From IMG/VR virus record IMGVR_UViG_3300042455_001086, positions 193,167-257,166 of that record: 64,000 bases of DNA; one strand, given 5' to 3'. Numbering within the stretch: the stretch's first letter is position 1; each line of letters begins with the position of its first letter. The translations under genes were made by a program, and so were the position numbers. The notes beneath the pieces are model-generated. The model made no database searches. It saw only the letters and a list, made by a program, of their open reading frames with translations, and was not told where the DNA came from. Below, one piece after another: positions 1 to 61,095 of this stretch.

Positions 1-3000
1 TTAAAAATAATAATATCATTACAATATTCATAATTAGTTACTTGTCCTGTTATATTAAATATTGTTCCTTTATTAAATGTTGGCATATATAATACACCAT
101 TTATCCAATTGTTTTGGAACATATGACTAAATACACCACGACATGCGGCAAAATTTATTCTAAACCTTGCAGACCATTCTAAAAATAATTTTATGTCGTC
201 GTCAATACTAGATATATATGGTTTGTTTAATAGATAATAGCAACCACCCTTTACTTTATCATCTTTTGAACATTCTTGATTTATACCAAAATTAACACCA
301 GAACCAGTATAACATTTTAACTCAACTAACCCATTACAACTTAAAGATTCCACAATTGATGTTCCAATCGCACCAGAATAATCTAAATCTTGTGATACTC
401 CGGTTGAATCTGGACTTGTGGATGTTGTTGAAAGTGGTGCCGATAATATACCCTCATTTGGTATTTTGTATATTGCAAAACTATTATTTTGGTGTAGTGC
501 AAAACTTGTATTTGGATTACCAACAGATCCTTCACTATTCGTTGATGTTGGTAGTCTATCACTTCTCATAATAATACCTTGTGGGTTATTAAAATTAACA
601 CCTGGTAGTGTAGAATATGTGTGATAACCAGGTGAATATAACCACCAATAAACAGGACTCCGATCGTAATCACCACCAATAAATCGATCAGATCTTAATC
701 TTGGACTTATTAAAAATGAACCACCACCAACATAGTAAGATTCTAATGGAGATATTAAATCATTACCTGCTGTATTTTGTGGTCCTGTTGAATCTGTGAG
801 TTGATCATCTTGACGATTATTTGGGTTTGACAGTGAATTTCTAAAAGGTAGCATTAGGTTATATACCTTGAAGTCTCCACCAAACGAAAGGTTTTGATTA
901 AGTCTATTTGTTGTTGGTACAATAAGATTATTTAAATTTAAATTTGTTGCTAATCCTAAATCTGGTCTATAATTACCAGGTAAATTAGAATTATTCCTAT
1001 CTGTTGATAAATAATAATATGGTAATTTTGAGTTTGTATTCGTATATTGAGAGAACAACATAGTGTCTGGAGTAAAGGTAAATGATGGATAATAATTTTT
1101 TCTATCCGTTGGTGAAACACTTGGTGAATTATCATTAGTATTATGTTCAATTGGTTTTAACCCATCAGAATAACCTCTAATTGGATAATTTAATTTAAAT
1201 TTACCTGAAACTTGGACTTGGTTATGATTTGAATAACCAAATATTCGACCTAAACCATATGTTATATTTTGTTTTTCAGTGTAAGGATCCACACCTCTAA
1301 CTAATACCAAAATACTTAACTGGTCCCACTGTTGGCATTGTGTAAATAAAGAAGACCAACTTTGGGTATAATCATCGTTTCCATCAAATTGTTCATAATT
1401 ATATCTTATTCTATGTAAAAGATATTCACTTGGAAAAGAACCTCTTGTTAAGTTACTTTTATTTAAAAATTCCTGAGTTGTCATCCCAGTCACTACTTGG
1501 AAATATTCAATATCACTAACAAATTTATAATTTGTTTTTGTATTCCCTGTTTGTATGATTTGTATTGTTGTTGATAAACTATTATTAGGATTATTAGGAT
1601 TAGCATACCAAATTGTTTTTGATATTGTTGTTCCGGTTGTTGTTGTACCAGTTATAGATGAAGTTCCAAATTCATTTGTTATTGTTCCACCAGTTGAGTC
1701 TGTTAATCCTGTTAATCTTATTAAGTCTGGTGATAATGCTGGATTTTGAAATGTTAATAAATCTCCGGATTGGAATTCTGATGTCATTCCAACATCACAA
1801 AGTAAAATAACGATTTGGTCTTTAAAATTTGGTGACCCATTAACACTTGTTGTAATTTGATTAATACCACCAATACTTGATGAGGCACTATCAAAATATT
1901 TATCCCTCAAATTAAATGAATTTAATTTTTGTGGCCAAGGTTCTGTAACAGGATAACCGAATTCATCCCTACGACGATTACAATCTTCGTTTCTTGTTAT
2001 AAAAGATCTTGAACCTCTTCTCCAAGAAACTGCAGGATCGTCAACACCAGAAAAAATTTGATTATAACTATTTGTCGCTTCTAATGTTACACTAGTTGGG
2101 CACTCATCCTCATACAACTTATTTAAATATGGATTTCTATTATAATTTGCCGTATCTCTACCACATTGGTAATTTGTTGATGTACTAATATTAGCTAATT
2201 TTGAAAAATTACCTTCGCCTGTTCCAGATGCAAAACTTTCAACTTCATCAAAATCTGATCCCCTATCTTCACACGGACAAGCATCACAATCTGGATATGA
2301 AATCATAGGTAATGCAATTTTTGAGAACCCTTTTTTTGCTATAATTTTTGGTGCTATTTTTATTAAAAAAAAGGCTAATATTGCTGAATAAATCACAATA
2401 GCTAAAAGATTACCAATTAACTGACCTAGAGCAAAGGGTACGGCACCTGCAACATTACTCGCCGCTTGTATTATTAGATAAGTTAGTAATAATGGGATGA
2501 ATATTACAATAACCCATTTAAAAATTGGCCAAATTGCCGCAATAAAATGTGCTAAAGATATTAGAATTATTATTGGAAATTTTAAAATAAACAATAATAT
2601 ACTTACGACAAACTCAATAAAATCAAAATTTCTTTGTAGGTCATTTACTGGAAATTTATTATTTTCACTCTGACAAGCTCTATTTGTTATTTCTTTTATA
2701 CCCAAATGTCTTGATCTTCCTTTACCATTTTTATATCTATCAATAAACGAACTTACAGTATATACTTTATTATAATTAAATTCATAAAAAGTATCTTCAC
2801 AATCAATTGCCGATTGTTTATCCGCATAATCATCCCAATCCAAACTAAAGGCGTATGATTTTAACACTTCAAAATAATTTTGTGGTAAAAAAGTAATATT
2901 AAATGTCTGTGATTGTGTGTCATCAATTGGGTTTGAGATAAACTGAATTGTGTCGCCAGCGGTAACCGGTATTGATGTTGTATCACCAAAATATGGTTGT

Positions 3001-4343
3001 CCGTTTATTATAACTGTTAAATTTGATGAATTTATTGTATCTTCAAGTAAATAACCACCAGTCCCAACTACTGGTATTGTTGATCCTGTTACAGTTCCAG
3101 CTGGTAATGTTACTGTTACTTGAGACGCTGAATTAGGATTAAATGGGTCGTTCCCAGATGATGTCCATCCGTGTTCTTTTATATTTGGGACAAGAAAATT
3201 ACCTCTTAAAAAATCATTTTGAATTCCTTGTTCGTTTTGCCATTTGATTTTAAATCTATATTTTCCTTTAGTTGGTATTCCTTTTTTAGGGTCGTTTGAA
3301 ATGACTTGTTGTCCAAACTCATTTGTTATAACATAATTAATATTCATAGGAATATTAATCATCCATGTTCCATTCTCATCAATTAATTTTCCACCCTCTT
3401 CAAATTTAAATTCTTCCAATGCTGGATTTCCGTTGTTGTCAGTAAAAATTGTTTGCCTAATTGCCAATATTTGTCCAGGACCTGCAATTAAATCACACAT
3501 ATTACCAGTATCATTTTTTGGTTTGCAATTTCTTTTAATCGCATCTTCATTTGTTGTCGAAACAATTGAACCCATAAAAACCGCTGTTGGTTCAATTTTA
3601 ATATTTGCTTCGGCCGTTAAATCAAAATCAACTCTTGTAATACCAAATTGACAAATATCAACATCACCCCAAAATGGTGAAACTTCAACAACTCTATTTA
3701 AAGTTTTAATTTGTGGTAATTCACTTAGGTTTGAAGACGATTTAAATCTATTCCCATTTACTTGTGACGGACTAGCAACACCGGCGTCGATTAAATCTTG
3801 TGGTGATAATGAAAAACAACCAATGTCCGATAAATCAACATCCATTACCAATGTTTGAGTTCCGGTTGGAACGCCAAATATCATAAAGTCACCACTATCA
3901 TTTGTCTTTACCGAAAACTTATAATACTTATCATACACTTCAATATATGATTGATCTAGTAAAACTTCTTGTCTTGTTGGGAATGTTCCTGTTGCGGCAT
4001 GAACCGAATAAGATGGGTCTTTTGGTAATAAATTATATCTATAACCTTCTTCATTTAAGTCTGATAAATTTTTATATGGATATAACTCAGAGATTATTGG
4101 ATTTGTTTCATCCTCTTGTGTTAATGGAACGAAAACAGATACTTTAGCGTTTGGAACCCCAAAACCACCATTTACCAATACCCTACCAACAACAACACCA
4201 TAGTCAGAACAAACTCTTGTATAAATGTCAGATTCATTTATTTTTAGTGAAAGTATCTCTAACTGGTCAAAATCTTGTTCTAACTTGACATTTATGTATT
4301 TGTCTTGACCAATTTCGGTTCTTATTCTATATGATTTGGGCAT
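1..4343 (-). CDS. Large (>1447 aa, runs off window) putative virion/baseplate-associated protein with internal hydrophobic multi-helix segment
   Basis: Not in ORF track because it has no stop in the window. ATG at 4343 (MPKSYRIRTEIGQDKYINVKLEQDF...), same frame at the window edge (...INGVLYMPTFNKGTIFNITGQVTNYEYCNDIIIF). N-terminal beta-sandwich-like GRVLVNGGFGVPNAKVSVF...TNDSGDFMIFGVP. Lies directly downstream of the baseplate wedge gene. Confidence 0.75.
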   Translation of the reverse strand, partial: MPKSYRIRTEIGQDKYINVKLEQDFDQLEILSLKINESDIYTRVCSDYGVVVGRVLVNGGFGVPNAKVSVFVPLTQEDETNPIISELYPYKNLSDLNEEGYRYNLLPKDPSYSVHAATGTFPTRQEVLLDQSYIEVYDKYYKFSVKTNDSGDFMIFGVPTGTQTLVMDVDLSDIGCFSLSPQDLIDAGVASPSQVNGNRFKSSSNLSELPQIKTLNRVVEVSPFWGDVDICQFGITRVDFDLTAEANIKIEPTAVFMGSIVSTTNEDAIKRNCKPKNDTGNMCDLIAGPGQILAIRQTIFTDNNGNPALEEFKFEEGGKLIDENGTWMINIPMNINYVITNEFGQQVISNDPKKGIPTKGKYRFKIKWQNEQGIQNDFLRGNFLVPNIKEHGWTSSGNDPFNPNSASQVTVTLPAGTVTGSTIPVVGTGGYLLEDTINSSNLTVIINGQPYFGDTTSIPVTAGDTIQFISNPIDDTQSQTFNITFLPQNYFEVLKSYAFSLDWDDYADKQSAIDCEDTFYEFNYNKVYTVSSFIDRYKNGKGRSRHLGIKEITNRACQSENNKFPVNDLQRNFDFIEFVVSILLFILKFPIIILISLAHFIAAIWPIFKWVIVIFIPLLLTYLIIQAASNVAGAVPFALGQLIGNLLAIVIYSAILAFFLIKIAPKIIAKKGFSKIALPMISYPDCDACPCEDRGSDFDEVESFASGTGEGNFSKLANISTSTNYQCGRDTANYNRNPYLNKLYEDECPTSVTLEATNSYNQIFSGVDDPAVSWRRGSRSFITRNEDCNRRRDEFGYPVTEPWPQKLNSFNLRDKYFDSASSSIGGINQITTSVNGSPNFKDQIVILLCDVGMTSEFQSGDLLTFQNPALSPDLIRLTGLTDSTGGTITNEFGTSSITGTTTTGTTISKTIWYANPNNPNNSLSTTIQIIQTGNTKTNYKFVSDIEYFQVVTGMTTQEFLNKSNLTRGSFPSEYLLHRIRYNYEQFDGNDDYTQSWSSLFTQCQQWDQLSILVLVRGVDPYTEKQNITYGLGRIFGYSNHNQVQVSGKFKLNYPIRGYSDGLKPIEHNTNDNSPSVSPTDRKNYYPSFTFTPDTMLFSQYTNTNSKLPYYYLSTDRNNSNLPGNYRPDLGLATNLNLNNLIVPTTNRLNQNLSFGGDFKVYNLMLPFRNSLSNPNNRQDDQLTDSTGPQNTAGNDLISPLESYYVGGGSFLISPRLRSDRFIGGDYDRSPVYWWLYSPGYHTYSTLPGVNFNNPQGIIMRSDRLPTSTNSEGSVGNPNTSFALHQNNSFAIYKIPNEGILSAPLSTTSTSPDSTGVSQDLDYSGAIGTSIVESLSCNGLVELKCYTGSGVNFGINQECSKDDKVKGGCYYLLNKPYISSIDDDIKLFLEWSARFRINFAACRGVFSHMFQNNWINGVLYMPTFNKGTIFNITGQVTNYEYCNDIIIF

Positions 4344-4417
4344 TAAATTCTACTTTTTTGATAAATAGTTTATTTCCTATTTTAGAAAAATAAGATTAAA
4401 ACCCAATAAATAAATTA

Positions 4418-6256
4418 TTATGAAAAATTCACGGTTTTTAGATTAATTACCCTAACATTAATATCTTTGTTTGGGAATCTAATTTGATAAATCTGTGTTG
4501 GTTCGGCAAAAATTGTGTCGTTAATTAACTGAATTTGTTTTGTTGCCGCATCAGAATATCTTTGTGATGTTTGATTTGATGAATATTGACCCCCAACTTT
4601 ATTGTAGAATCTAATATCTGAAATACTAACAATACCATTTTCGTTTTGAATAATTCTTCTCAATTCTGATACATTAACATTTTGACCCAATTGTCTTGTT
4701 GTAGGGCTAAAGAATGTTGTAACCAAATTAATGAGTTTAGACACAAGCGCACCTTGGTTTTGTGTCGCATCCAAAACAACATCAACATCAATAGATAAAT
4801 CAATCGGATTTGCACTTTCAATGGAAATATAATCATTTATCATTCTATAATTTGAAAGATAATTGGCGACATTATTTTTTAATGTGTTTGATATTGTGTC
4901 AGTTAAATTACCACTAGCGTCAAATGACAACATTTTAATTTTAATCTTATTATTTTCTTCTGTGATTGATACTTTTGCTGGAGCTCCAAATTGTGATGGC
5001 ATTGTTCTAATTAATGACTCATAATCGTTAATCGTTGTTGCTCTATTTTGTGCCGCAAAGTTAAACGAAACCATTTGTCTAACATCTTCTGTTGTTGGTG
5101 CGTTTGCACCCCCAATAGCTGCCGTCACATTATTACATCTCAATGTGTTAATTACACTTCTATTTACACTTTCAGATGGACCATTAACAAAAAATGAAAC
5201 AGTACCAATTTGTGTTATAACATTTGCACCAAGATTTGATGCTTGTCCGCCACCAATTCTATATTGAATAAACAAAGTAGAGTTTGACTTTAATGCCGAA
5301 CCCAATGCTAAATTATTTGAATACTTATTCAAATCAAAAGAATTTCCGGTTCTTGCAAATTCTCTTAATTGTTCTTCAGCCGAAATGTTTCCACCACCAA
5401 ATGTCATTTTTAAATAACCTTCCGGAGTATATTCCGATATGAATTTTGTATTTGTTGTAACATATTTACCAACTTTAATTCCAGGTTGGTCTGATACTTT
5501 TGTTGGGTCTTCAATAAACACCCTATCTTCAGCGAGAGCTTTTACTTCATACCATCTATTATCAAGACCTAAAAATTCTTGTGGTTCTGGAATATTAGTA
5601 TATTGTGTTCCGTCTTTTAAAATAACACTTGTAATACCCAAAACATTTTTTTCTGGTAAAAATAATTCAAAATAAGGTTTTACATCATTTGGTGTAATTA
5701 CTCTTTTGAATACTTTGGTAATACCATTTACAACAACTTCTCTTTTTGTAATTGTATAATTTAATAACTTTCCGTTTGCATCAAAATTTGGTATTTTTAA
5801 TCTATTTGGTGATCCTTCAGCATTAATTGGTGATGCAAAGTCAATATCATATACGGTCTCAAATGGTTGTCCCGCTCCGGACGCTTGTGATCCTCTTCTT
5901 AAAACACCACAGTATCTTAAATCTTCCTTATCACCAAAAGCCGGAACTGTGATTGAAAAATCAACTAATGCAACTGATGGTCTTTGTCCTGGTATTTTTA
6001 ATCCATAAGTTCTTGCTATATTGTAAATTGATGATTTTTGTTGTGCGTATTGTAATACGGTTTCTTGAATACTCCTATCTATTTGGAAATGTAGATTGTC
6101 CGTTACTGCCGCATTTAAGTCCATAAGAACAGAAAACACCCCAGCATCATTGAAATTCTGAATAAGGTCTGGGTAATAAGTTCTTGTAAAATTAATTAAC
6201 TCAGTTCTTATAGTCTGGAAGTCTCTAGCTGTGTATGATATTTTCTTTTCCGCCAT
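4418..6256 (-). CDS. Baseplate wedge protein (T4 gp6 / baseplate J-like)
   Basis: N-terminal ISYTARDFQTIRTELINF, YRIGGG..N, GGANAPTTEDVRQ, QNRATTINDY motifs typical of gp6-like wedge proteins; adjacent to gp25-like gene. Confidence 0.85.
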   Translation of the reverse strand: MAEKKISYTARDFQTIRTELINFTRTYYPDLIQNFNDAGVFSVLMDLNAAVTDNLHFQIDRSIQETVLQYAQQKSSIYNIARTYGLKIPGQRPSVALVDFSITVPAFGDKEDLRYCGVLRRGSQASGAGQPFETVYDIDFASPINAEGSPNRLKIPNFDANGKLLNYTITKREVVVNGITKVFKRVITPNDVKPYFELFLPEKNVLGITSVILKDGTQYTNIPEPQEFLGLDNRWYEVKALAEDRVFIEDPTKVSDQPGIKVGKYVTTNTKFISEYTPEGYLKMTFGGGNISAEEQLREFARTGNSFDLNKYSNNLALGSALKSNSTLFIQYRIGGGQASNLGANVITQIGTVSFFVNGPSESVNRSVINTLRCNNVTAAIGGANAPTTEDVRQMVSFNFAAQNRATTINDYESLIRTMPSQFGAPAKVSITEENNKIKIKMLSFDASGNLTDTISNTLKNNVANYLSNYRMINDYISIESANPIDLSIDVDVVLDATQNQGALVSKLINLVTTFFSPTTRQLGQNVNVSELRRIIQNENGIVSISDIRFYNKVGGQYSSNQTSQRYSDAATKQIQLINDTIFAEPTQIYQIRFPNKDINVRVINLKTVNFS

Positions 6257-42153: not shown

Positions 42154-43190
42154 ATTAATTCTTGTGTAAAAACAATTTCAGCATCTTTTGAGTTGTCATA
42201 CTTTGTTATAACAATTCTTAATGTATCTCCGGTGTTAATTTGTATTTCACTCAGGCTATTACCATAATAATCATCATTTATAAAAGCTTGATATTCATCA
42301 ACATTATTGTTTGCTGATAATTTAAGATTTACGGTATATTCAAAGGTATTAACTGACACCAAATTTCCTATTTTATATTTTGGATTATAGGTTGAAACAA
42401 TTTGAGGTTGTTCTTTTTTTTGTTTTTTTCTTTTTACTCCGGTTTCAGTCTCATACATTTGAAAAGTTCTTGTAATTGCCGGTCTAATTTCAAATTCATC
42501 TTCATCCATTAAAAATCCTTGTAATGTGAATTCATATTTTTGAAGATACACTTTTCTTTTTTCCAAATCCATAACCGATTCATCTTGGATATTACCCATA
42601 ATAATTGGAATATAATGCCCTTTGATTACCTGGTATGCTTGTTTTGAGGCAAACTTTGTAAGAACAATTTGGTTAAATTTATTTAACTCTCTCATTCTAT
42701 TACACACAATAATTACAGTATATTTAATATCAACTGGTATTGGTTGTGGTATTTTATAAATGTCAAAACCATTTCTTTGTCCATCCCAGGTTGGAACCTT
42801 GGCATAATAATATTGTCTTCTTTCCGGAATATTGAGTGTCATTAAAGAGGGGTTGTTTCCGTATGTTACTTCTGGCGACCTAACAACGGCAATAAATGGG
42901 GGTTCAACATTTTTATCAATGTTTTGGAAGTCCCAAGTTTCAGTAAATTGAGCCCAGTTTTGTGTTGTAATTAAAATATCAATCATAGGAACGGTATTAC
43001 CCTCGACAACACATTTCAGTTCATCACGAACAAAATCCAAAAACCCTCTATCCAAATCTGGATGTAATAACGATTTTGGTAGATATGTCCCATCTTGAGA
43101 AATCATATCAGCAATCTCGTGTCTTCTTGGGAGAAGAGTTTTCTTATCTATAAGGTCAATATTTTTTTTAATTTTTTTTGGTAGTCCCAT
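42150..43190 (-). CDS. Tail completion/terminator protein (gp15-like, putative)
   Basis: IPQPIPVDIKYTVIIVCNRMRELN; located between neck gene and sheath; probable start MGLPKK at 43190. Confidence 0.55.
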   Translation of the reverse strand: MGLPKKIKKNIDLIDKKTLLPRRHEIADMISQDGTYLPKSLLHPDLDRGFLDFVRDELKCVVEGNTVPMIDILITTQNWAQFTETWDFQNIDKNVEPPFIAVVRSPEVTYGNNPSLMTLNIPERRQYYYAKVPTWDGQRNGFDIYKIPQPIPVDIKYTVIIVCNRMRELNKFNQIVLTKFASKQAYQVIKGHYIPIIMGNIQDESVMDLEKRKVYLQKYEFTLQGFLMDEDEFEIRPAITRTFQMYETETGVKRKKQKKEQPQIVSTYNPKYKIGNLVSVNTFEYTVNLKLSANNNVDEYQAFINDDYYGNSLSEIQINTGDTLRIVITKYDNSKDAEIVFTQELI

Positions 43191-43191
43191 A

Positions 43192-43709
43192 TTATAATCC
43201 TCTAAATTCGTTAGGTCCAACTGGTGCGGCAATAATAGTTCTATAAAATGGACGGTAACCTTTATATGTGTGTTTTATATCAGATGTAACACGACCATCA
43301 TTCACAACCGTGTAGTATCGAACAAAACTTTCTGTATCATAATACCCAATATAATCTCCAAAATCGATATCAACATCTAAATCTTCGAGAGTTTTTAAAT
43401 AAACAGACATTGTAATATTTCCAGGTTCAAGTTGGTCCATTTTGGTTGATCCCATAAATTTATTTTCAGGTGTCGCAATTCCAACATAAGCGTTAAATTC
43501 AACTGGAGGTAAAAATTTAATACCATCTGAAACTGTTTCACCATAAACATCATCGGTTTTGGTTTTGTTTTTATCGACACGATATAAAACACAGGTATAG
43601 TTCATATCACCGATTAACCATTCCATCCCAAGGCCCACCTCTAAAAAAAAAAATCTTCTTCTCCGAAGAACTTACCAAGCCTTGTTATGGGCACTCTATT
43701 ATTTGACAT
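43192..43709 (-). CDS. Neck/head-closure protein (gp14-like, putative), reading frame broken by a T11 run
   Basis: ATG 43709 MSNNRVPITRLGKFFGEEDF joins LEVGLGMEWLIGDMNYTCVLYRVD only after a +1/-2 nt change in the T run at 43643-43653. Confidence 0.55.
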
Positions 43710-44398
43710 ATAAGTTATGTTTTTTTACAAATTTAAATATAATTTTATTACTACATCCATAAATATTACCTATCTGAACATAGTTTAGTCCATTTATTAA
43801 ATGGTTTTTTATTTCATCAACCACTAAATTATAAATATTAGATTTTGGTTTATATATTTCATATTGTCTTAAATTTTTATTAATTGTGTTTATAGCACAA
43901 TTAAATAAATTACTAATTTCTTTTATAGTTTTATTTTTTATAATATGTGAACTACCCAACCACTAAAGATGGTTGGGCTTCAGGACTCGTAGACTCACCT
44001 AATGGTAACGCCTCCTCCTGTTTTTGTTTAATGTCCGATTCTATTCTATAACCAGACAATATGTTTATTCCTTGTTTCAGGATGTTTTTACCTAATATTG
44101 GATTTATATTACCACCATCAGCAAGGTTAAATAAATCAAAATTTAATTGTCTATATTTTGAAATTTCGTCTATTTCAGCTTGTAATAAATCATCATATGA
44201 TTTACATTCTTTTATTTGTCTAATTATTGGTCTTTTATTTTCATTTTTTAAATCATTAAACCAAGATGCGATAAATTGATTTGTTGGTGATTTTAAATGA
44301 CCGTTTAATCTTCTTTGTAGTCCATTTTTTGTTATACCAATATACTTTAATTCGTTAGTGTCTGGACAAAATAAACCATATAATTCAAACCTATTCAT
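43699..44398 (-). pseudogene. GIY-YIG homing endonuclease gene interrupted by an IS200/IS605 end fragment
   Basis: N-part LYGL..KYIGIT..RRLNGH..E..FNLADGG (44398-44090); C-part with two HTH-like repeats (43699-43946). Confidence 0.7.
43947..44090 (-). mobile_element. IS200/IS605-family right end with tnpB 3' tail (omegaRNA region) remnant
   Basis: Translates KNILKQGINILSG...KQK.EEA...PEAQPSLVVG (TnpB C-terminal tail type); hairpin CCCAACCA-TCTTTAG-TGGTTGGG then TAGTTCAC end; GC-richer than flanks. Confidence 0.7.
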
Positions 44399-44446
44399 TA
44401 TTGATAAATATCATTTTATGATTATTTTTATTTATATCTTGGAATT

Positions 44447-46207
44447 TTGGAAATACAAAAAAAACTGATAGAACATAAAGCCCTTGATTTATTGGACTCA
44501 TATAGTGGGGCCAATAACCATATTCTATATATGAAGACCAAAAAAGAAACTAATAAAAAGTTTTATCCAACAAGAACTCAAGCCGAATATGTTGTAACTT
44601 ATTTTGATACAAAACCAAAGGTTGCAAGAAAGTGGGTTGAACTGGATCCATACTTTGCAAAGAAGTTTGCACAAGAAAGATATTTGTTTGAAACGCCAGA
44701 AAAAGTCTATATTGAAAAGCTACTTGTTGAAAAAGATAAATCATATCATATCTGGGGTAAATTTTTTGAAAAAGACAGTTTGTCCGAATTTTGGGTGCCC
44801 AAGTCGTCCCTTATTAAATCACAAACGGTAGATGATATTGTTATTGATTATTCTAAATACGAACATAGACCTCCACTATCACACCAGAAAGAAGCAATAG
44901 AAAAACTTACAAAATCTAGAAGATTTATTTTAGCTGATGACATGGGCGTCGGAAAGACATGTTCCACAATTATCGCAGCACTTGAGACCAACACAAAAAA
45001 AATTTTGGTAGTTTGTCCTGCGTCACTTAAAATAAATTGGCAACGAGAATTTAACATATATACCAATCGTAGTATTTTTATTGCTGAAGGAAAAAAATTC
45101 TCAACGGAACACGATATTGTAATTGTTAATTATGATATTTTAAAGAACTTTTATGATATTAAAAACCCAAGTGATTCGCCAATTGGTCAAACTAACTTTG
45201 ATTTAATCATATTGGATGAAGCTCATATGGTAAGTAATAGTCAAGCTGCTAGAACAAAAATAATTAATAGTTTTACAAAAAAAGCCAAATATTTGTGGTT
45301 ATTAACGGGAACACCAATGACAAACAGACCAATCAACTATTATAATTTATTAAATTTGATTGAAAGTCCGGTTGCACAAAACTGGATGGCGTATGCTATT
45401 CGTTATTGTCAAGGATTTCAGTTTAGAGCTGGCAATCGAAAAATATGGAATGTAACCGGAGCATCAAATCTGGAAGAATTAAGAGAAAGAACATCAAAAC
45501 AAATTTTAAGAAGATTAAAAGAAGATGTTTTGGATTTACCGGATAAGATTATTACACCCGTATATTTAAGAACATCATCAAAAGAATATAAAGATTTAAT
45601 GGGTGAATATTATGAATGGTTAGAAAATAAAAAAGAAGAATCCTCTTCTCTTACCGTTCAGTTCTCAAAACTTATGAAAGTAAGAAAAGTAATTGCAAAT
45701 GAAAAAGTAAAAGAAACAATTGAATTTGCTCAAAATATTATAGACCAAGGAAAAAAAGTAATAATATTTACAAACTTCACAGATACACTTCAACTTATCC
45801 ATAATCATTTTGGTAAAGAATCGGTATATCTTGATGGTAGTTGTAATAAAGTCCAAAGACAATACGCTGTAGATCAATTCCAAGAAAATGAAAAAATTAA
45901 AGTGTTTGTTGGAAACTTAAAAGCCGCCGGTGTTGGACTTACATTAACTTCAGCCGAAGTTGTAATAATGAACGATTTATCATTTGTTCCCGCAGAACAC
46001 GCACAAGCTGAAGATAGGGCATATCGTTACGGTCAAAAAAATAATGTATTAGTTTATTACCCAGTGTTTATTAATACAATTGAAGGTACGATATATGATA
46101 TTCTAAATAAAAAGAAAAAAATTATCGGAACCGTAATGGGTGATGAGGTCCAAGATACTGGTGATGTTGTGGAAGAAATTTTGAATCTTATAAATAAAAG
46201 ACCTTAA
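44447..46207 (+). CDS. SNF2-family (HARP/SMARCAL1-like) helicase
   Basis: ILADDMGVGKT, DEAH, LTGTP, AAGVGLTL, QAEDRAYRYGQ. Confidence 0.9.
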   Translation: MEIQKKLIEHKALDLLDSYSGANNHILYMKTKKETNKKFYPTRTQAEYVVTYFDTKPKVARKWVELDPYFAKKFAQERYLFETPEKVYIEKLLVEKDKSYHIWGKFFEKDSLSEFWVPKSSLIKSQTVDDIVIDYSKYEHRPPLSHQKEAIEKLTKSRRFILADDMGVGKTCSTIIAALETNTKKILVVCPASLKINWQREFNIYTNRSIFIAEGKKFSTEHDIVIVNYDILKNFYDIKNPSDSPIGQTNFDLIILDEAHMVSNSQAARTKIINSFTKKAKYLWLLTGTPMTNRPINYYNLLNLIESPVAQNWMAYAIRYCQGFQFRAGNRKIWNVTGASNLEELRERTSKQILRRLKEDVLDLPDKIITPVYLRTSSKEYKDLMGEYYEWLENKKEESSSLTVQFSKLMKVRKVIANEKVKETIEFAQNIIDQGKKVIIFTNFTDTLQLIHNHFGKESVYLDGSCNKVQRQYAVDQFQENEKIKVFVGNLKAAGVGLTLTSAEVVIMNDLSFVPAEHAQAEDRAYRYGQKNNVLVYYPVFINTIEGTIYDILNKKKKIIGTVMGDEVQDTGDVVEEILNLINKRP

Positions 46208-60976: not shown

Positions 60977-61061
60977 ATATAATTTTTTAATAAAAAAATA
61001 TGGAATAAAATAAAAAGTTGAATGGTTAAATAATTATTATTTTATATAACACCCACCGAAA

Positions 61062-61095
61062 AAACCCACAAATCTTTAGTTCGTGAGTGGTTCAA
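61062..61095 (+). mobile_element. Degenerate solo IS200/IS605-type right end
   Basis: AAACCCACAAA-TCTTTAG-TTCGTGAGTGGTTCAA has the same loop and GTTCA end as the element at 43947-43980. Confidence 0.45.

What the first reader, a model, noticed from the sequence alone, without database searches (positions are those of the whole stretch)
43927..44090. Orphan TnpB omegaRNA-like cassette inside a dead GIY-YIG gene
Seen: ~145 bp encoding a TnpB-type C-terminal tail plus a perfect 8-bp subterminal hairpin and a GTTCAC end replace the middle of a GIY-YIG gene; no tnpA/tnpB body remains. Established: the TnpB guide RNA scaffold comes from this 3' tail/right-end region and the guide is the flanking DNA. 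The retained piece is about scaffold-sized, and it lies on a transcript predicted to run from the TATTTAT motif at 44404 into the neck genes. The guide would be ATATTATAAAAAATAAAACT, matching the uninterrupted endonuclease allele. Inference: it could arm a TnpB supplied in trans against related phages, or it is simply a deletion scar.
Basis: partly seen in the sequence, partly recalled or inferred. Interest (0 to 1): 0.6.

Follow-up and report, generated by a model that had tools for sequence, protein, structure and literature searches.

The report
Leftover transposon end in dead endonuclease gene
A 146-base leftover of the right end of an IS605-type transposon, the part that normally makes the guide RNA for the TnpB nuclease, replaces the middle of a homing-endonuclease gene in a 257-kb lake phage that has no TnpB of its own; it is most likely a decay product, not a working device.

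Summary
Window 43947-44092 (minus strand) is 96.6% identical to the last 146 bp of an IS605-family tnpA/tnpB element found in related lake-phage contigs. It ends exactly at the element's right end (...hairpin-TAGTTCAC). It replaces 403 bp of a GIY-YIG homing-endonuclease gene that is intact (324 aa) in a close relative (L044).

The piece holds three stem-loops that show covariation across copies, and all are intact here. That fits the usual guide-RNA (omegaRNA) scaffold of TnpB.

The flank that would serve as guide matches the intact allele with one mismatch. In that allele it lies directly 3' of TTTAT, the insertion motif I infer for this element group.

The complete phage genome has no tnpB, no tnpA and no left end. 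It does hold a second 50-bp remnant of the same element group.

The left junction lies in a 17-nt imperfect microhomology, as expected for a deletion or an incomplete repair copy. Full copies, left-end-less copies, protein-less mini-elements and solo ends of this element all occur in related phages, so decay is common.

Verdict: a degenerate solo right end of a known kind of element. Use in trans by a co-infecting phage's TnpB is possible but untested; no RNA data exist.

The parts
44093..44398 (-). N-terminal fragment of a GIY-YIG homing-endonuclease gene (catalytic domain, about 102 codons), still open and fused in frame to the transposon tail
   Evidence: Pfam GIY-YIG E 1.4e-5 and PHROG 314 'homing endonuclease'. 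98% aa identity to the intact 324-aa allele in L044.
44076..44092 (-). Left junction: a 17-nt imperfect microhomology zone in which the GIY-YIG sequence switches to tnpB sequence
   Evidence: Window GGTAAAAACATCCTGAA, L044 GGTAAAACACATACTGAA, tnpB (L025) AGTAAAAACATCCTGAA.
43947..44092 (-). Solo right-end remnant of an IS605-family element: the last 45 codons of tnpB plus stop, the subterminal hairpin and the terminal TAGTTCAC. This is the region that gives the omegaRNA scaffold in TnpB elements.
   Evidence: 96.6% identity over 146 bp to the end of the full tnpA/tnpB element in L025, and 94-96% to L007 and L037. Covariance model R1 scores 181.6 bits, E 1.7e-36.
44032..44058 (-). Stem-loop 1 of the conserved structure (9 pairs)
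   Evidence: RNAalifold consensus and pair counts; 2 pairs show changes on both sides.
43981..44020 (-). Stem-loop 2 (outer 5-pair helix plus inner 10-pair helix)
   Evidence: 6 pairs with compensatory changes in L013 and L011. The window's own substitutions fall in loops or turn G-U into G-C.
43954..43978 (-). Stem-loop 3: the subterminal right-end hairpin (core 23-mer at 43955-43977). It overlaps the tnpB stop codon TAG at 43952-43954.
   Evidence: Exact 23-mer in 37 viral-contig stretches and in 5 bacterial or MAG contigs. 10 pairs.
43927..43946 (-). Flank directly 3' of the right end. It would be the guide if the tail is transcribed and bound by a TnpB.
   Evidence: Matches L044 with 1 mismatch, next to TTTAT. 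L046 has 3 mismatches; more distant alleles have 4-5.
43699..43946 (-). C-terminal fragment of the GIY-YIG endonuclease gene (two helix-turn-helix DNA-binding units). It is cut off from the catalytic domain by the tnpB stop codon.
   Evidence: Aligns at 94.5% DNA identity to the 3' part of the L044 gene. Weak HTH hits in Pfam and PHROG 8446.
44404..44412 (-). GATATTTAT gene-start motif, 5 nt upstream of the GIY-YIG ATG
   Evidence: 7 copies in the window, all on the minus strand (2.6 expected). 32 in the genome, 24 of them followed by an ORF.

Best explanation
The piece is a degenerate solo right end of an IS605-family (tnpA/tnpB) insertion sequence that circulates among related freshwater jumbo phages.

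An element of this family inserted into the GIY-YIG homing-endonuclease gene directly 3' of the motif TTTAT (codons D-L-Y). This step is inferred.

Later, one event removed the left end, tnpA (if present), codons 1-352 of tnpB and 403 bp of the endonuclease gene. That event was either a deletion between short similar sequences or an incomplete copy made during break repair. It left only the last 146 bp, joined through a 17-nt imperfect microhomology.

What remains is the part that in intact copies encodes the TnpB C-terminal tail, the structured omegaRNA scaffold and the hairpin bound by the transposase. With no left end, no transposase and no TnpB in this genome, it can neither move nor cut. 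It is carried along passively inside the transcript of the broken endonuclease gene.

The allele also lacks the TTTAT next to the target, so it would not itself be cut by a TnpB guided to this site.
For: Shown:
- 146 bp at 96.6% identity to the end of full elements, ending exactly at the shared terminus.
- Full elements encode TnpB and a Y1 TnpA.
- The intact allele L044 shows what was lost: 403 bp encoding NUMOD3 motifs and a zinc finger.
- In L044 the right-flank sequence is preceded by TTTAT.
- TTTAT also precedes the insertion point at a second uninterrupted site (L071) and at five left-end junctions: L005, L021, L011, L036 and the window's second remnant.
- There is microhomology at the left junction. 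An 8-nt microhomology lies at the internal deletion of the L020/L023 mini-element.
- The complete genome has no tnpB, tnpA, left end or other copy of the tail.
- The same genome holds a second 50-bp remnant.
- Decay products of the same element are frequent in related phages: a solo left end (L064/66/70), a solo tail (L028), mini-elements (L020/23, L022) and left-end-less tnpB copies (L007, L037).
- Both junctions are present without differences in contigs of an independent lake sample (X4).
Against: - No copy of the full element at this exact site was found, so the original insertion is inferred.
- All three stem-loops are intact. The window's four internal substitutions fall in loops or turn a G-U pair into G-C. 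That is what selection on the RNA would give, although these changes may predate the truncation.
- Four independent short derivatives keep at least the last 120 bp with all three stems. This could reflect selection for the guide-RNA module.
- Related phages in the same lakes carry intact TnpB with near-identical scaffolds, so trans use cannot be excluded.
Confidence: 0.75

Rival explanations
1. Working orphan guide-RNA module. The tail is transcribed with the broken endonuclease gene. It is bound and trimmed by a TnpB supplied by a co-infecting related phage (or the host). It then directs cutting of phages that carry the intact endonuclease allele (TTTAT + target). The result is exclusion of those phages, or conversion of them to the tail-bearing allele by recombination.
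For: - The scaffold is intact, with covariation-supported stems.
- The RNA folds far better on the tnpB sense strand than on the other (z -5.5 against -0.8).
- The target is present with the TTTAT motif and one mismatch in the closest intact allele.
- Intact TnpB genes with 94-98% identical tails occur in contigs whose other genes resemble this phage's, such as L007.
- A mini-element of the same family co-occurs in the same lake sample.
- The literature states that protein-less derivatives often encode omegaRNAs that must be used in trans (PMC10055086).
- A gene-start motif lies upstream.
Against: - No TnpB in the complete phage genome.
- No RNA data.
- The mismatch at guide position 6 lies in the part next to the motif, where TnpB is least tolerant (established knowledge of TnpB, not tested here).
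- More distant alleles have 3-5 mismatches.
- Only one lineage carries this allele: the window and L010/L043.
- The structure may simply have been inherited recently from an active copy.
Confidence: 0.12
2. Abortive homing product. A TnpB-bearing phage with the element at this site cut the empty allele of this phage's ancestor. Repair copied from the donor's right flank leftwards into the element but stopped after about 146 nt. The new strand then annealed through microhomology to the resected left side 403 bp away. This gives the same sequence as a later deletion, but in one step and without this lineage ever holding a full copy.
For: - The right junction is exact while the left side is rearranged. 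The same pattern is seen at the L020/L023 site when compared with L071.
- Microhomology lies at the left junction.
- TnpB-driven homing by break repair is established (PMC10055086, PMC10690162). Homing between co-infecting phages is discussed in PMC13565253.
Against: The end product cannot be told apart from that of a simple deletion. No donor with a full copy at this site was found.
Confidence: 0.1
3. Chance capture. The tail was picked up by illegitimate recombination from another phage's element, without any true insertion at this site.
For: Recombination between short shared motifs is seen elsewhere. The left junction of L007 lies in the GATATTTAT motif shared by phage and element.
Against: The piece ends at the exact canonical terminus. 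In the intact allele the flank is preceded by TTTAT, the motif seen at the other insertion sites. Both together are unlikely by chance.
Confidence: 0.03

Closest known systems
IS200/IS605-family insertion sequences of the IS605/IS606 type (divergent tnpA and tnpB, as in Helicobacter pylori)
   Same: - Full relatives have a Y1 transposase and a TnpB in divergent orientation.
- They carry a subterminal hairpin at the right end and insert 3' of a short A/T motif (TTTAT) with no sign of a target duplication.
- The identical 23-nt hairpin occurs in Helicobacter contigs.
   Different: - The window holds only the last 146 bp: no left end, no transposase, no TnpB.
- The carriers are lake phages of about 30% G+C, not bacterial chromosomes.
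TnpB omegaRNA (right-end RNA) of IS200/IS605 elements
   Same: It comes from the 3' end of tnpB plus the right end and is about 120-150 nt long. It has conserved stems with covariation on the sense strand. The adjacent flank is in the position of a guide.
   Different: No TnpB partner in the genome, no RNA evidence, and no match to any Rfam family. Binding and processing were not tested.
PATE-like protein-less derivatives of IS200/IS605 (Meers et al., PMC10055086)
   Same: It is a short non-coding derivative that keeps the guide-RNA region and depends on proteins made elsewhere. True examples of this element family exist in related phages: L020/L023 and L022, with left end plus right end.
   Different: The window's piece has no left end, so the transposase cannot mobilise it. 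It is a solo end, not a mini-element.
Free-standing GIY-YIG homing endonucleases of phages (Seg-like, I-TevI-like)
   Same: The interrupted gene has the GIY-YIG domain. In its intact form it also has NUMOD3 motifs, an I-TevI-type zinc finger and a helix-turn-helix tail.
   Different: Here the linker and zinc-finger part is missing, and a stop codon separates the catalytic and DNA-binding parts. The gene is very likely dead.

Membership tests
IS200/IS605 family element | Y1 (HUH) transposase TnpA | tested here: not met
   Absent from the window and from the whole 257-kb genome. Present in full relatives L018, L025, L031 and L067 (Y1_Tnp E 2e-33).
IS200/IS605 family element | Subterminal hairpins at both the left and the right end | tested here: not met
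   The right-end hairpin is present and exact. No left-end sequence lies within 3 kb or anywhere else next to it. So the piece is a fragment of a member, not an element.
IS200/IS605 family element | Insertion 3' of a specific short motif, without target duplication | tested here: met
   TTTAT directly precedes the right-flank sequence in the uninterrupted alleles L044 and L071. It also precedes five left ends.
TnpB omegaRNA | Derived from the 3' end of tnpB and the right end of the element | tested here: met
   146 bp at 96.6% identity to the end of intact tnpB genes, up to the terminus.
TnpB omegaRNA | Conserved secondary structure | tested here: met
   34 pairs, 98.9% of cells paired against at most 46.5% when partners are slid. 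9 pairs have changes on both sides against 1.7 in shuffles (0 of 500). All pairs are kept in the window.
TnpB omegaRNA | A cognate TnpB to bind it | tested here: not met
   Only residues 353-398 of TnpB are encoded in the complete genome. The host is unknown and was not searched.
TnpB omegaRNA | Expressed and processed as a discrete RNA carrying a 16-20-nt guide | not testable with these tools
   All 20 runs that hold the region are DNA metagenomes.
TnpB omegaRNA | The guide matches a target next to the element's motif in the empty site | tested here: met
   L044 has TTTAT + ATATTTTAAAAAATAAAACT, one mismatch to the flank.
GIY-YIG homing endonuclease | GIY-YIG catalytic domain joined to a DNA-binding region in one protein | tested here: not met
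   The catalytic domain is present. The NUMOD3 and zinc-finger region is deleted, and the helix-turn-helix part lies behind a stop codon.
IStron (IS605 element fused to a group I intron) | Group I intron core that splices the element out of the host gene | tested here: not met
   No intron family, or any other Rfam family, matches 43400-44700 at E up to 10 apart from three chance snoRNA hits.

The most novel reading that the evidence does not exclude
The solo right end is a 'guide-only hitchhiker'. It has lost every protein gene and its left end but still produces a functional omegaRNA. When a relative that carries the cognate TnpB co-infects the same cell, that nuclease is steered to the intact endonuclease allele. 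Break repair then copies the tail-bearing deletion allele into the rival genome. If so, a piece of non-coding DNA would spread by homing with a borrowed nuclease, at the cost of a protein-based homing endonuclease.
Probability: 0.1. Interest if true: 0.65.

Novelty: new member of a known kind. Interest (0 to 1): 0.3.

Why it matters
As it stands, this is a clean example of two selfish elements in decay: a transposon landed in a homing-endonuclease gene and both then broke down. That is the expected late stage of the invasion-fixation-degeneration cycle of such elements.

Its wider value lies in what the search turned up. An IS605-type TnpB family with a TTTAT motif is spread through a group of freshwater jumbo phages. 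It occurs as full elements, as tnpB genes without a left end or transposase that sit like free-standing phage genes, as protein-less mini-elements, and as solo ends.

This material could be used to test whether TnpB acts as an RNA-guided homing endonuclease between co-infecting phages, and whether guide-RNA modules survive without their nuclease.

Tried and rejected
- Rfam scan of 43400-44700 at E up to 10: only three chance snoRNA hits, no omegaRNA, intron or other family.
- blastn of 43600-44450 against deposited phage genomes: no match.
- Terminator reading of the hairpin: rejected. No T-run on either strand, and the terminator scan found none in 43100-44600.
- Sigma-70 promoter scan: fewer sites than in shuffles. 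One weak site inside the tail (44067-44038) was not pursued.
- IStron / group I intron: rejected.
- Endonuclease gene invading a tnpB gene, the reverse order of events: rejected. The intact allele L044 shows the endonuclease gene is the interrupted one, and no tnpB 5' part lies upstream.
- Motif from the left ends of tnpA-bearing copies: ambiguous. Four contexts end in WWAT before AAATATCC, and that sequence overlaps the phage gene-start motif.
- The L007 left junction was first taken as a TTTAT site, then dropped, because it lies inside the GATATTTAT motif shared by phage and element.
- Expression: no RNA run holds the region. Laying four DNA runs gave only fragmented contigs. They confirm both junctions in X4 but neither show nor exclude the intact allele in the same samples.
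- A second pattern scan for more family-A tails found no new copies.
It gave Helicobacter, a Saccharibacteria MAG and a Bacteroidetes MAG, but no clear host for this phage.
- The large protein searches, structure prediction and complex prediction were not used, because family scans settled the proteins.

Full report
WHAT IS THERE

The window is the last 64 kb of a 257,166-bp virus record with inverted terminal repeats, rated 100% complete. It has 30% G+C. It is found in lake-water and freshwater metagenomes from 16 studies, 2020-2025.

On the minus strand, a 148-aa ORF (43952-44398) starts with a GIY-YIG catalytic domain. It ends in 45 residues that do not belong to that family. An 86-aa ORF with helix-turn-helix motifs follows (43699-43959). 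Between them G+C rises from about 15-25% to 52%.

IDENTITY OF THE INSERT

The 23-nt hairpin core (43955-43977) occurs exactly in 37 stretches of viral contigs. In nearly all of them it is followed by TAGTTCA(C/A), and then the sequences diverge. This marks the end of a mobile element.

In L007, L018, L025, L031 and L037 the hairpin closes a 398-aa ORF that ends in the same tail. That protein has the OrfB_IS605, Cas12f1-like TNB and HTH_OrfB_IS605 domains, so it is a TnpB. In L018, L025 and L031 a divergent 149-aa Y1 transposase lies upstream. The element is therefore an IS605-type member of the IS200/IS605 family.

More distant TnpB genes (44-55% identity) share the same hairpin and terminus. 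They occur in L005, L011, L021, L027 and in a Saccharibacteria MAG contig (L058). The 23-mer also occurs in Helicobacter contigs and a Bacteroidetes MAG contig.

The window matches only the last 146 bp of the element (43947-44092, 96.6% identity to L025).

WHAT WAS LOST

L044, from another sample, has the same endonuclease gene intact: 324 aa, 98% identical in the N-terminal part, with flanks 95% identical in DNA. Its middle carries NUMOD3 motifs and an I-TevI-type zinc finger. The window lacks 403 bp of it and has the 146-bp tail instead. 'Replaces the middle' is therefore correct.

The two junctions:
- At the right junction the element ends at TAGTTCAC and the endonuclease sequence resumes exactly. 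In L044 the resumed sequence is preceded by ...GATTTAT.
- At the left junction the endonuclease and tnpB sequences share an imperfect 17-nt stretch, GTAAAA(C)ACAT(A/C)CTGAA.

THE INSERTION MOTIF

TTTAT directly precedes the insertion point at two uninterrupted sites, L044 and L071. L071 is the counterpart of the L020/L023 site.

TTTAT also lies 5-7 nt before the conserved CCACCG of the left end in L005, L021, L011, L036 and in a second remnant in this window.

I take TTTAT as the transposon-adjacent motif of this element group. Left ends of the tnpA-bearing copies were ambiguous, and the L007 junction was dropped as evidence.

STRUCTURE

The minus-strand RNA of 43900-44090 folds with z = -5.5, the plus strand with z = -0.8.

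Eleven tails were aligned. Three stem-loops emerge, with 34 pairs:
- 98.9% of cells are paired, against at most 46.5% when the partners are slid.
- 9 pairs have changes on both sides, against 1.7 in shuffles (0 of 500 shuffles reach this).
- Several invariant G-U pairs exist only on the tnpB sense strand.

This is what is expected of the omegaRNA scaffold, whose origin from this part of the element is established knowledge. The window keeps every pair. Its own substitutions fall in loops or convert a G-U pair to G-C. No Rfam family matches.

IS THERE A NUCLEASE?

No. The evidence:
- Pfam-profile searches of the whole genome for the two TnpB domains found nothing above cut-off.
- A protein search with the L025 TnpB found only residues 353-398.
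- blastn with 16 element variants found only the 146-bp tail.
- The covariance model found only the tail plus one weak hit.

The weak hit is a second dead remnant at 61046-61095. It is a left-end-type sequence with a degenerate hairpin and a GGTTCAA end, preceded by TTTAT.

CONTEXT IN RELATED PHAGES

Many contigs that carry this element family are relatives of this phage: 60-80% of the locus is covered by tblastx hits at about 50% identity.

The close ('family A') copies are:
- three elements with tnpA;
- two intact tnpB + right end without left end or tnpA (L007, L037);
- two protein-less mini-elements with left and right ends (L020/L023, L022);
- two solo tails (this one with L010, and L028);
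- two copies cut by contig ends.

A solo left end also exists (L064/66/70).

The four independent short derivatives keep 146, 142, about 123 and about 120 bp of the right end, always with all three stems. The two longer ones share an A-rich microhomology site.

In lake sample X4, contigs carry both junctions of the window's allele without a difference. The L020-type mini-element is present in the same sample.

HOW IT MOST LIKELY CAME ABOUT AND WHAT IT DOES

Shown: the identity of the piece, its exact terminus, the lost 403 bp, the microhomology, and the absence of the proteins.

Inferred: an element inserted 3' of TTTAT in the endonuclease gene. One event then removed everything left of the last 146 bp together with 403 bp of the gene. 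That event was either a deletion or an incomplete repair copy during homing.

The remnant cannot transpose because it has no left end. It cannot cut because there is no TnpB. The fused ORF has no DNA-binding part, so the endonuclease is very likely dead. The allele also lacks TTTAT next to the target and would escape a TnpB guided to this site.

The would-be guide matches L044 with one mismatch, at position 6, next to TTTAT. More distant alleles have 3-5 mismatches. A recurrent gene-start motif lies upstream of the gene. Cognate TnpB genes exist in related phages.

So use in trans is possible. Protein-less derivatives that depend on TnpB in trans are already described (PMC10055086), and homing between co-infecting phages is discussed in a 2026 review (PMC13565253). 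Nothing here shows that it happens, and no RNA data exist. I give it about 0.1.

VERDICT

It is a decayed member of a known kind of element. Interest is modest for the finding itself. It is higher for the phage-borne TnpB family around it.

Noticed in passing
window 61046-61095 (+) (G000 254212-254261): A second 50-bp remnant of the same element group. It has a left-end-type sequence ATAACACCCACCGAAAAAACCC..., a degenerate hairpin and a GGTTCAA end, and is preceded by TTTAT. It resembles the left ends of L005 and L021. Model R1 scores it weakly (23 bits, E 0.036).
   Followed up: partly
window 44404-44412 (-) and six other minus-strand sites (16925, 34259, 37651, 39556, 50146, 60386); 32 sites in the whole genome: The motif GATATTTAT is enriched and strand-biased: 7 in the window against 2.6 expected, all on the minus strand. 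In the genome 24 of 32 sites are followed by an ATG-ORF of at least 40 aa within 70 nt, often only 3-19 nt away. It may be a promoter or a start signal of this phage group. The same motif lies 6 nt upstream of the tnpB ATG in L025, L018, L031 and L037, so the element's tnpB carries a phage-type start signal.
   Followed up: partly
L007:9261-10462 (-) and L037:6294-7495 (+): Intact 398-aa tnpB genes with a right end but no left end and no tnpA. They sit between phage genes like free-standing homing-endonuclease genes. The left junction of L007 lies in the GATATTTAT motif shared with the phage backbone.
   Followed up: partly
L028:2572-2717 (-) and L028:4882-6614: Another solo family-A tail of about 123 bp without a left end. 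It lies about 2.2 kb from a complete tnpA/tnpB element of a different subfamily (TnpB 53% identical) on the same contig. Here an orphan tail and a distant nuclease sit in one genome.
   Followed up: no
L064, L066, L070 (about 90 bp around the match to AACCTTGATTTAAAATATATT): A solo left-end remnant of the tnpA-bearing element: the left end plus about 30 nt of the tnpA 3' end, in an intergenic region.
   Followed up: no
L008, L009, L015, L016, L017, L019, L026, L035 (about 100 bp ending at the hairpin): A mini-element of about 100 bp (left-end hairpin variant plus a short stem plus the right-end hairpin). It is inserted at the 3' end of a 166-aa ORF and is identical in eight contigs.
   Followed up: no
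L058-L062 (bacterial and MAG contigs): The 23-nt right-end hairpin is identical in contigs labelled Helicobacter sp., a Saccharibacteria MAG and a Bacteroidetes MAG. In L058 it closes a TnpB 44% identical to the phage one. The hairpin, which also encodes ...QPSLVVG*, is far more conserved than the proteins.
   Followed up: partly
L023 (reverse strand 2797-4575) compared with L071:10659-10774: At the L020/L023 mini-element site, 116 bp of L071 are replaced by 1,779 bp that hold an extra gene plus the mini-element. The right junction is exact while the left side is rearranged, the same asymmetry as in the window.
   Followed up: partly
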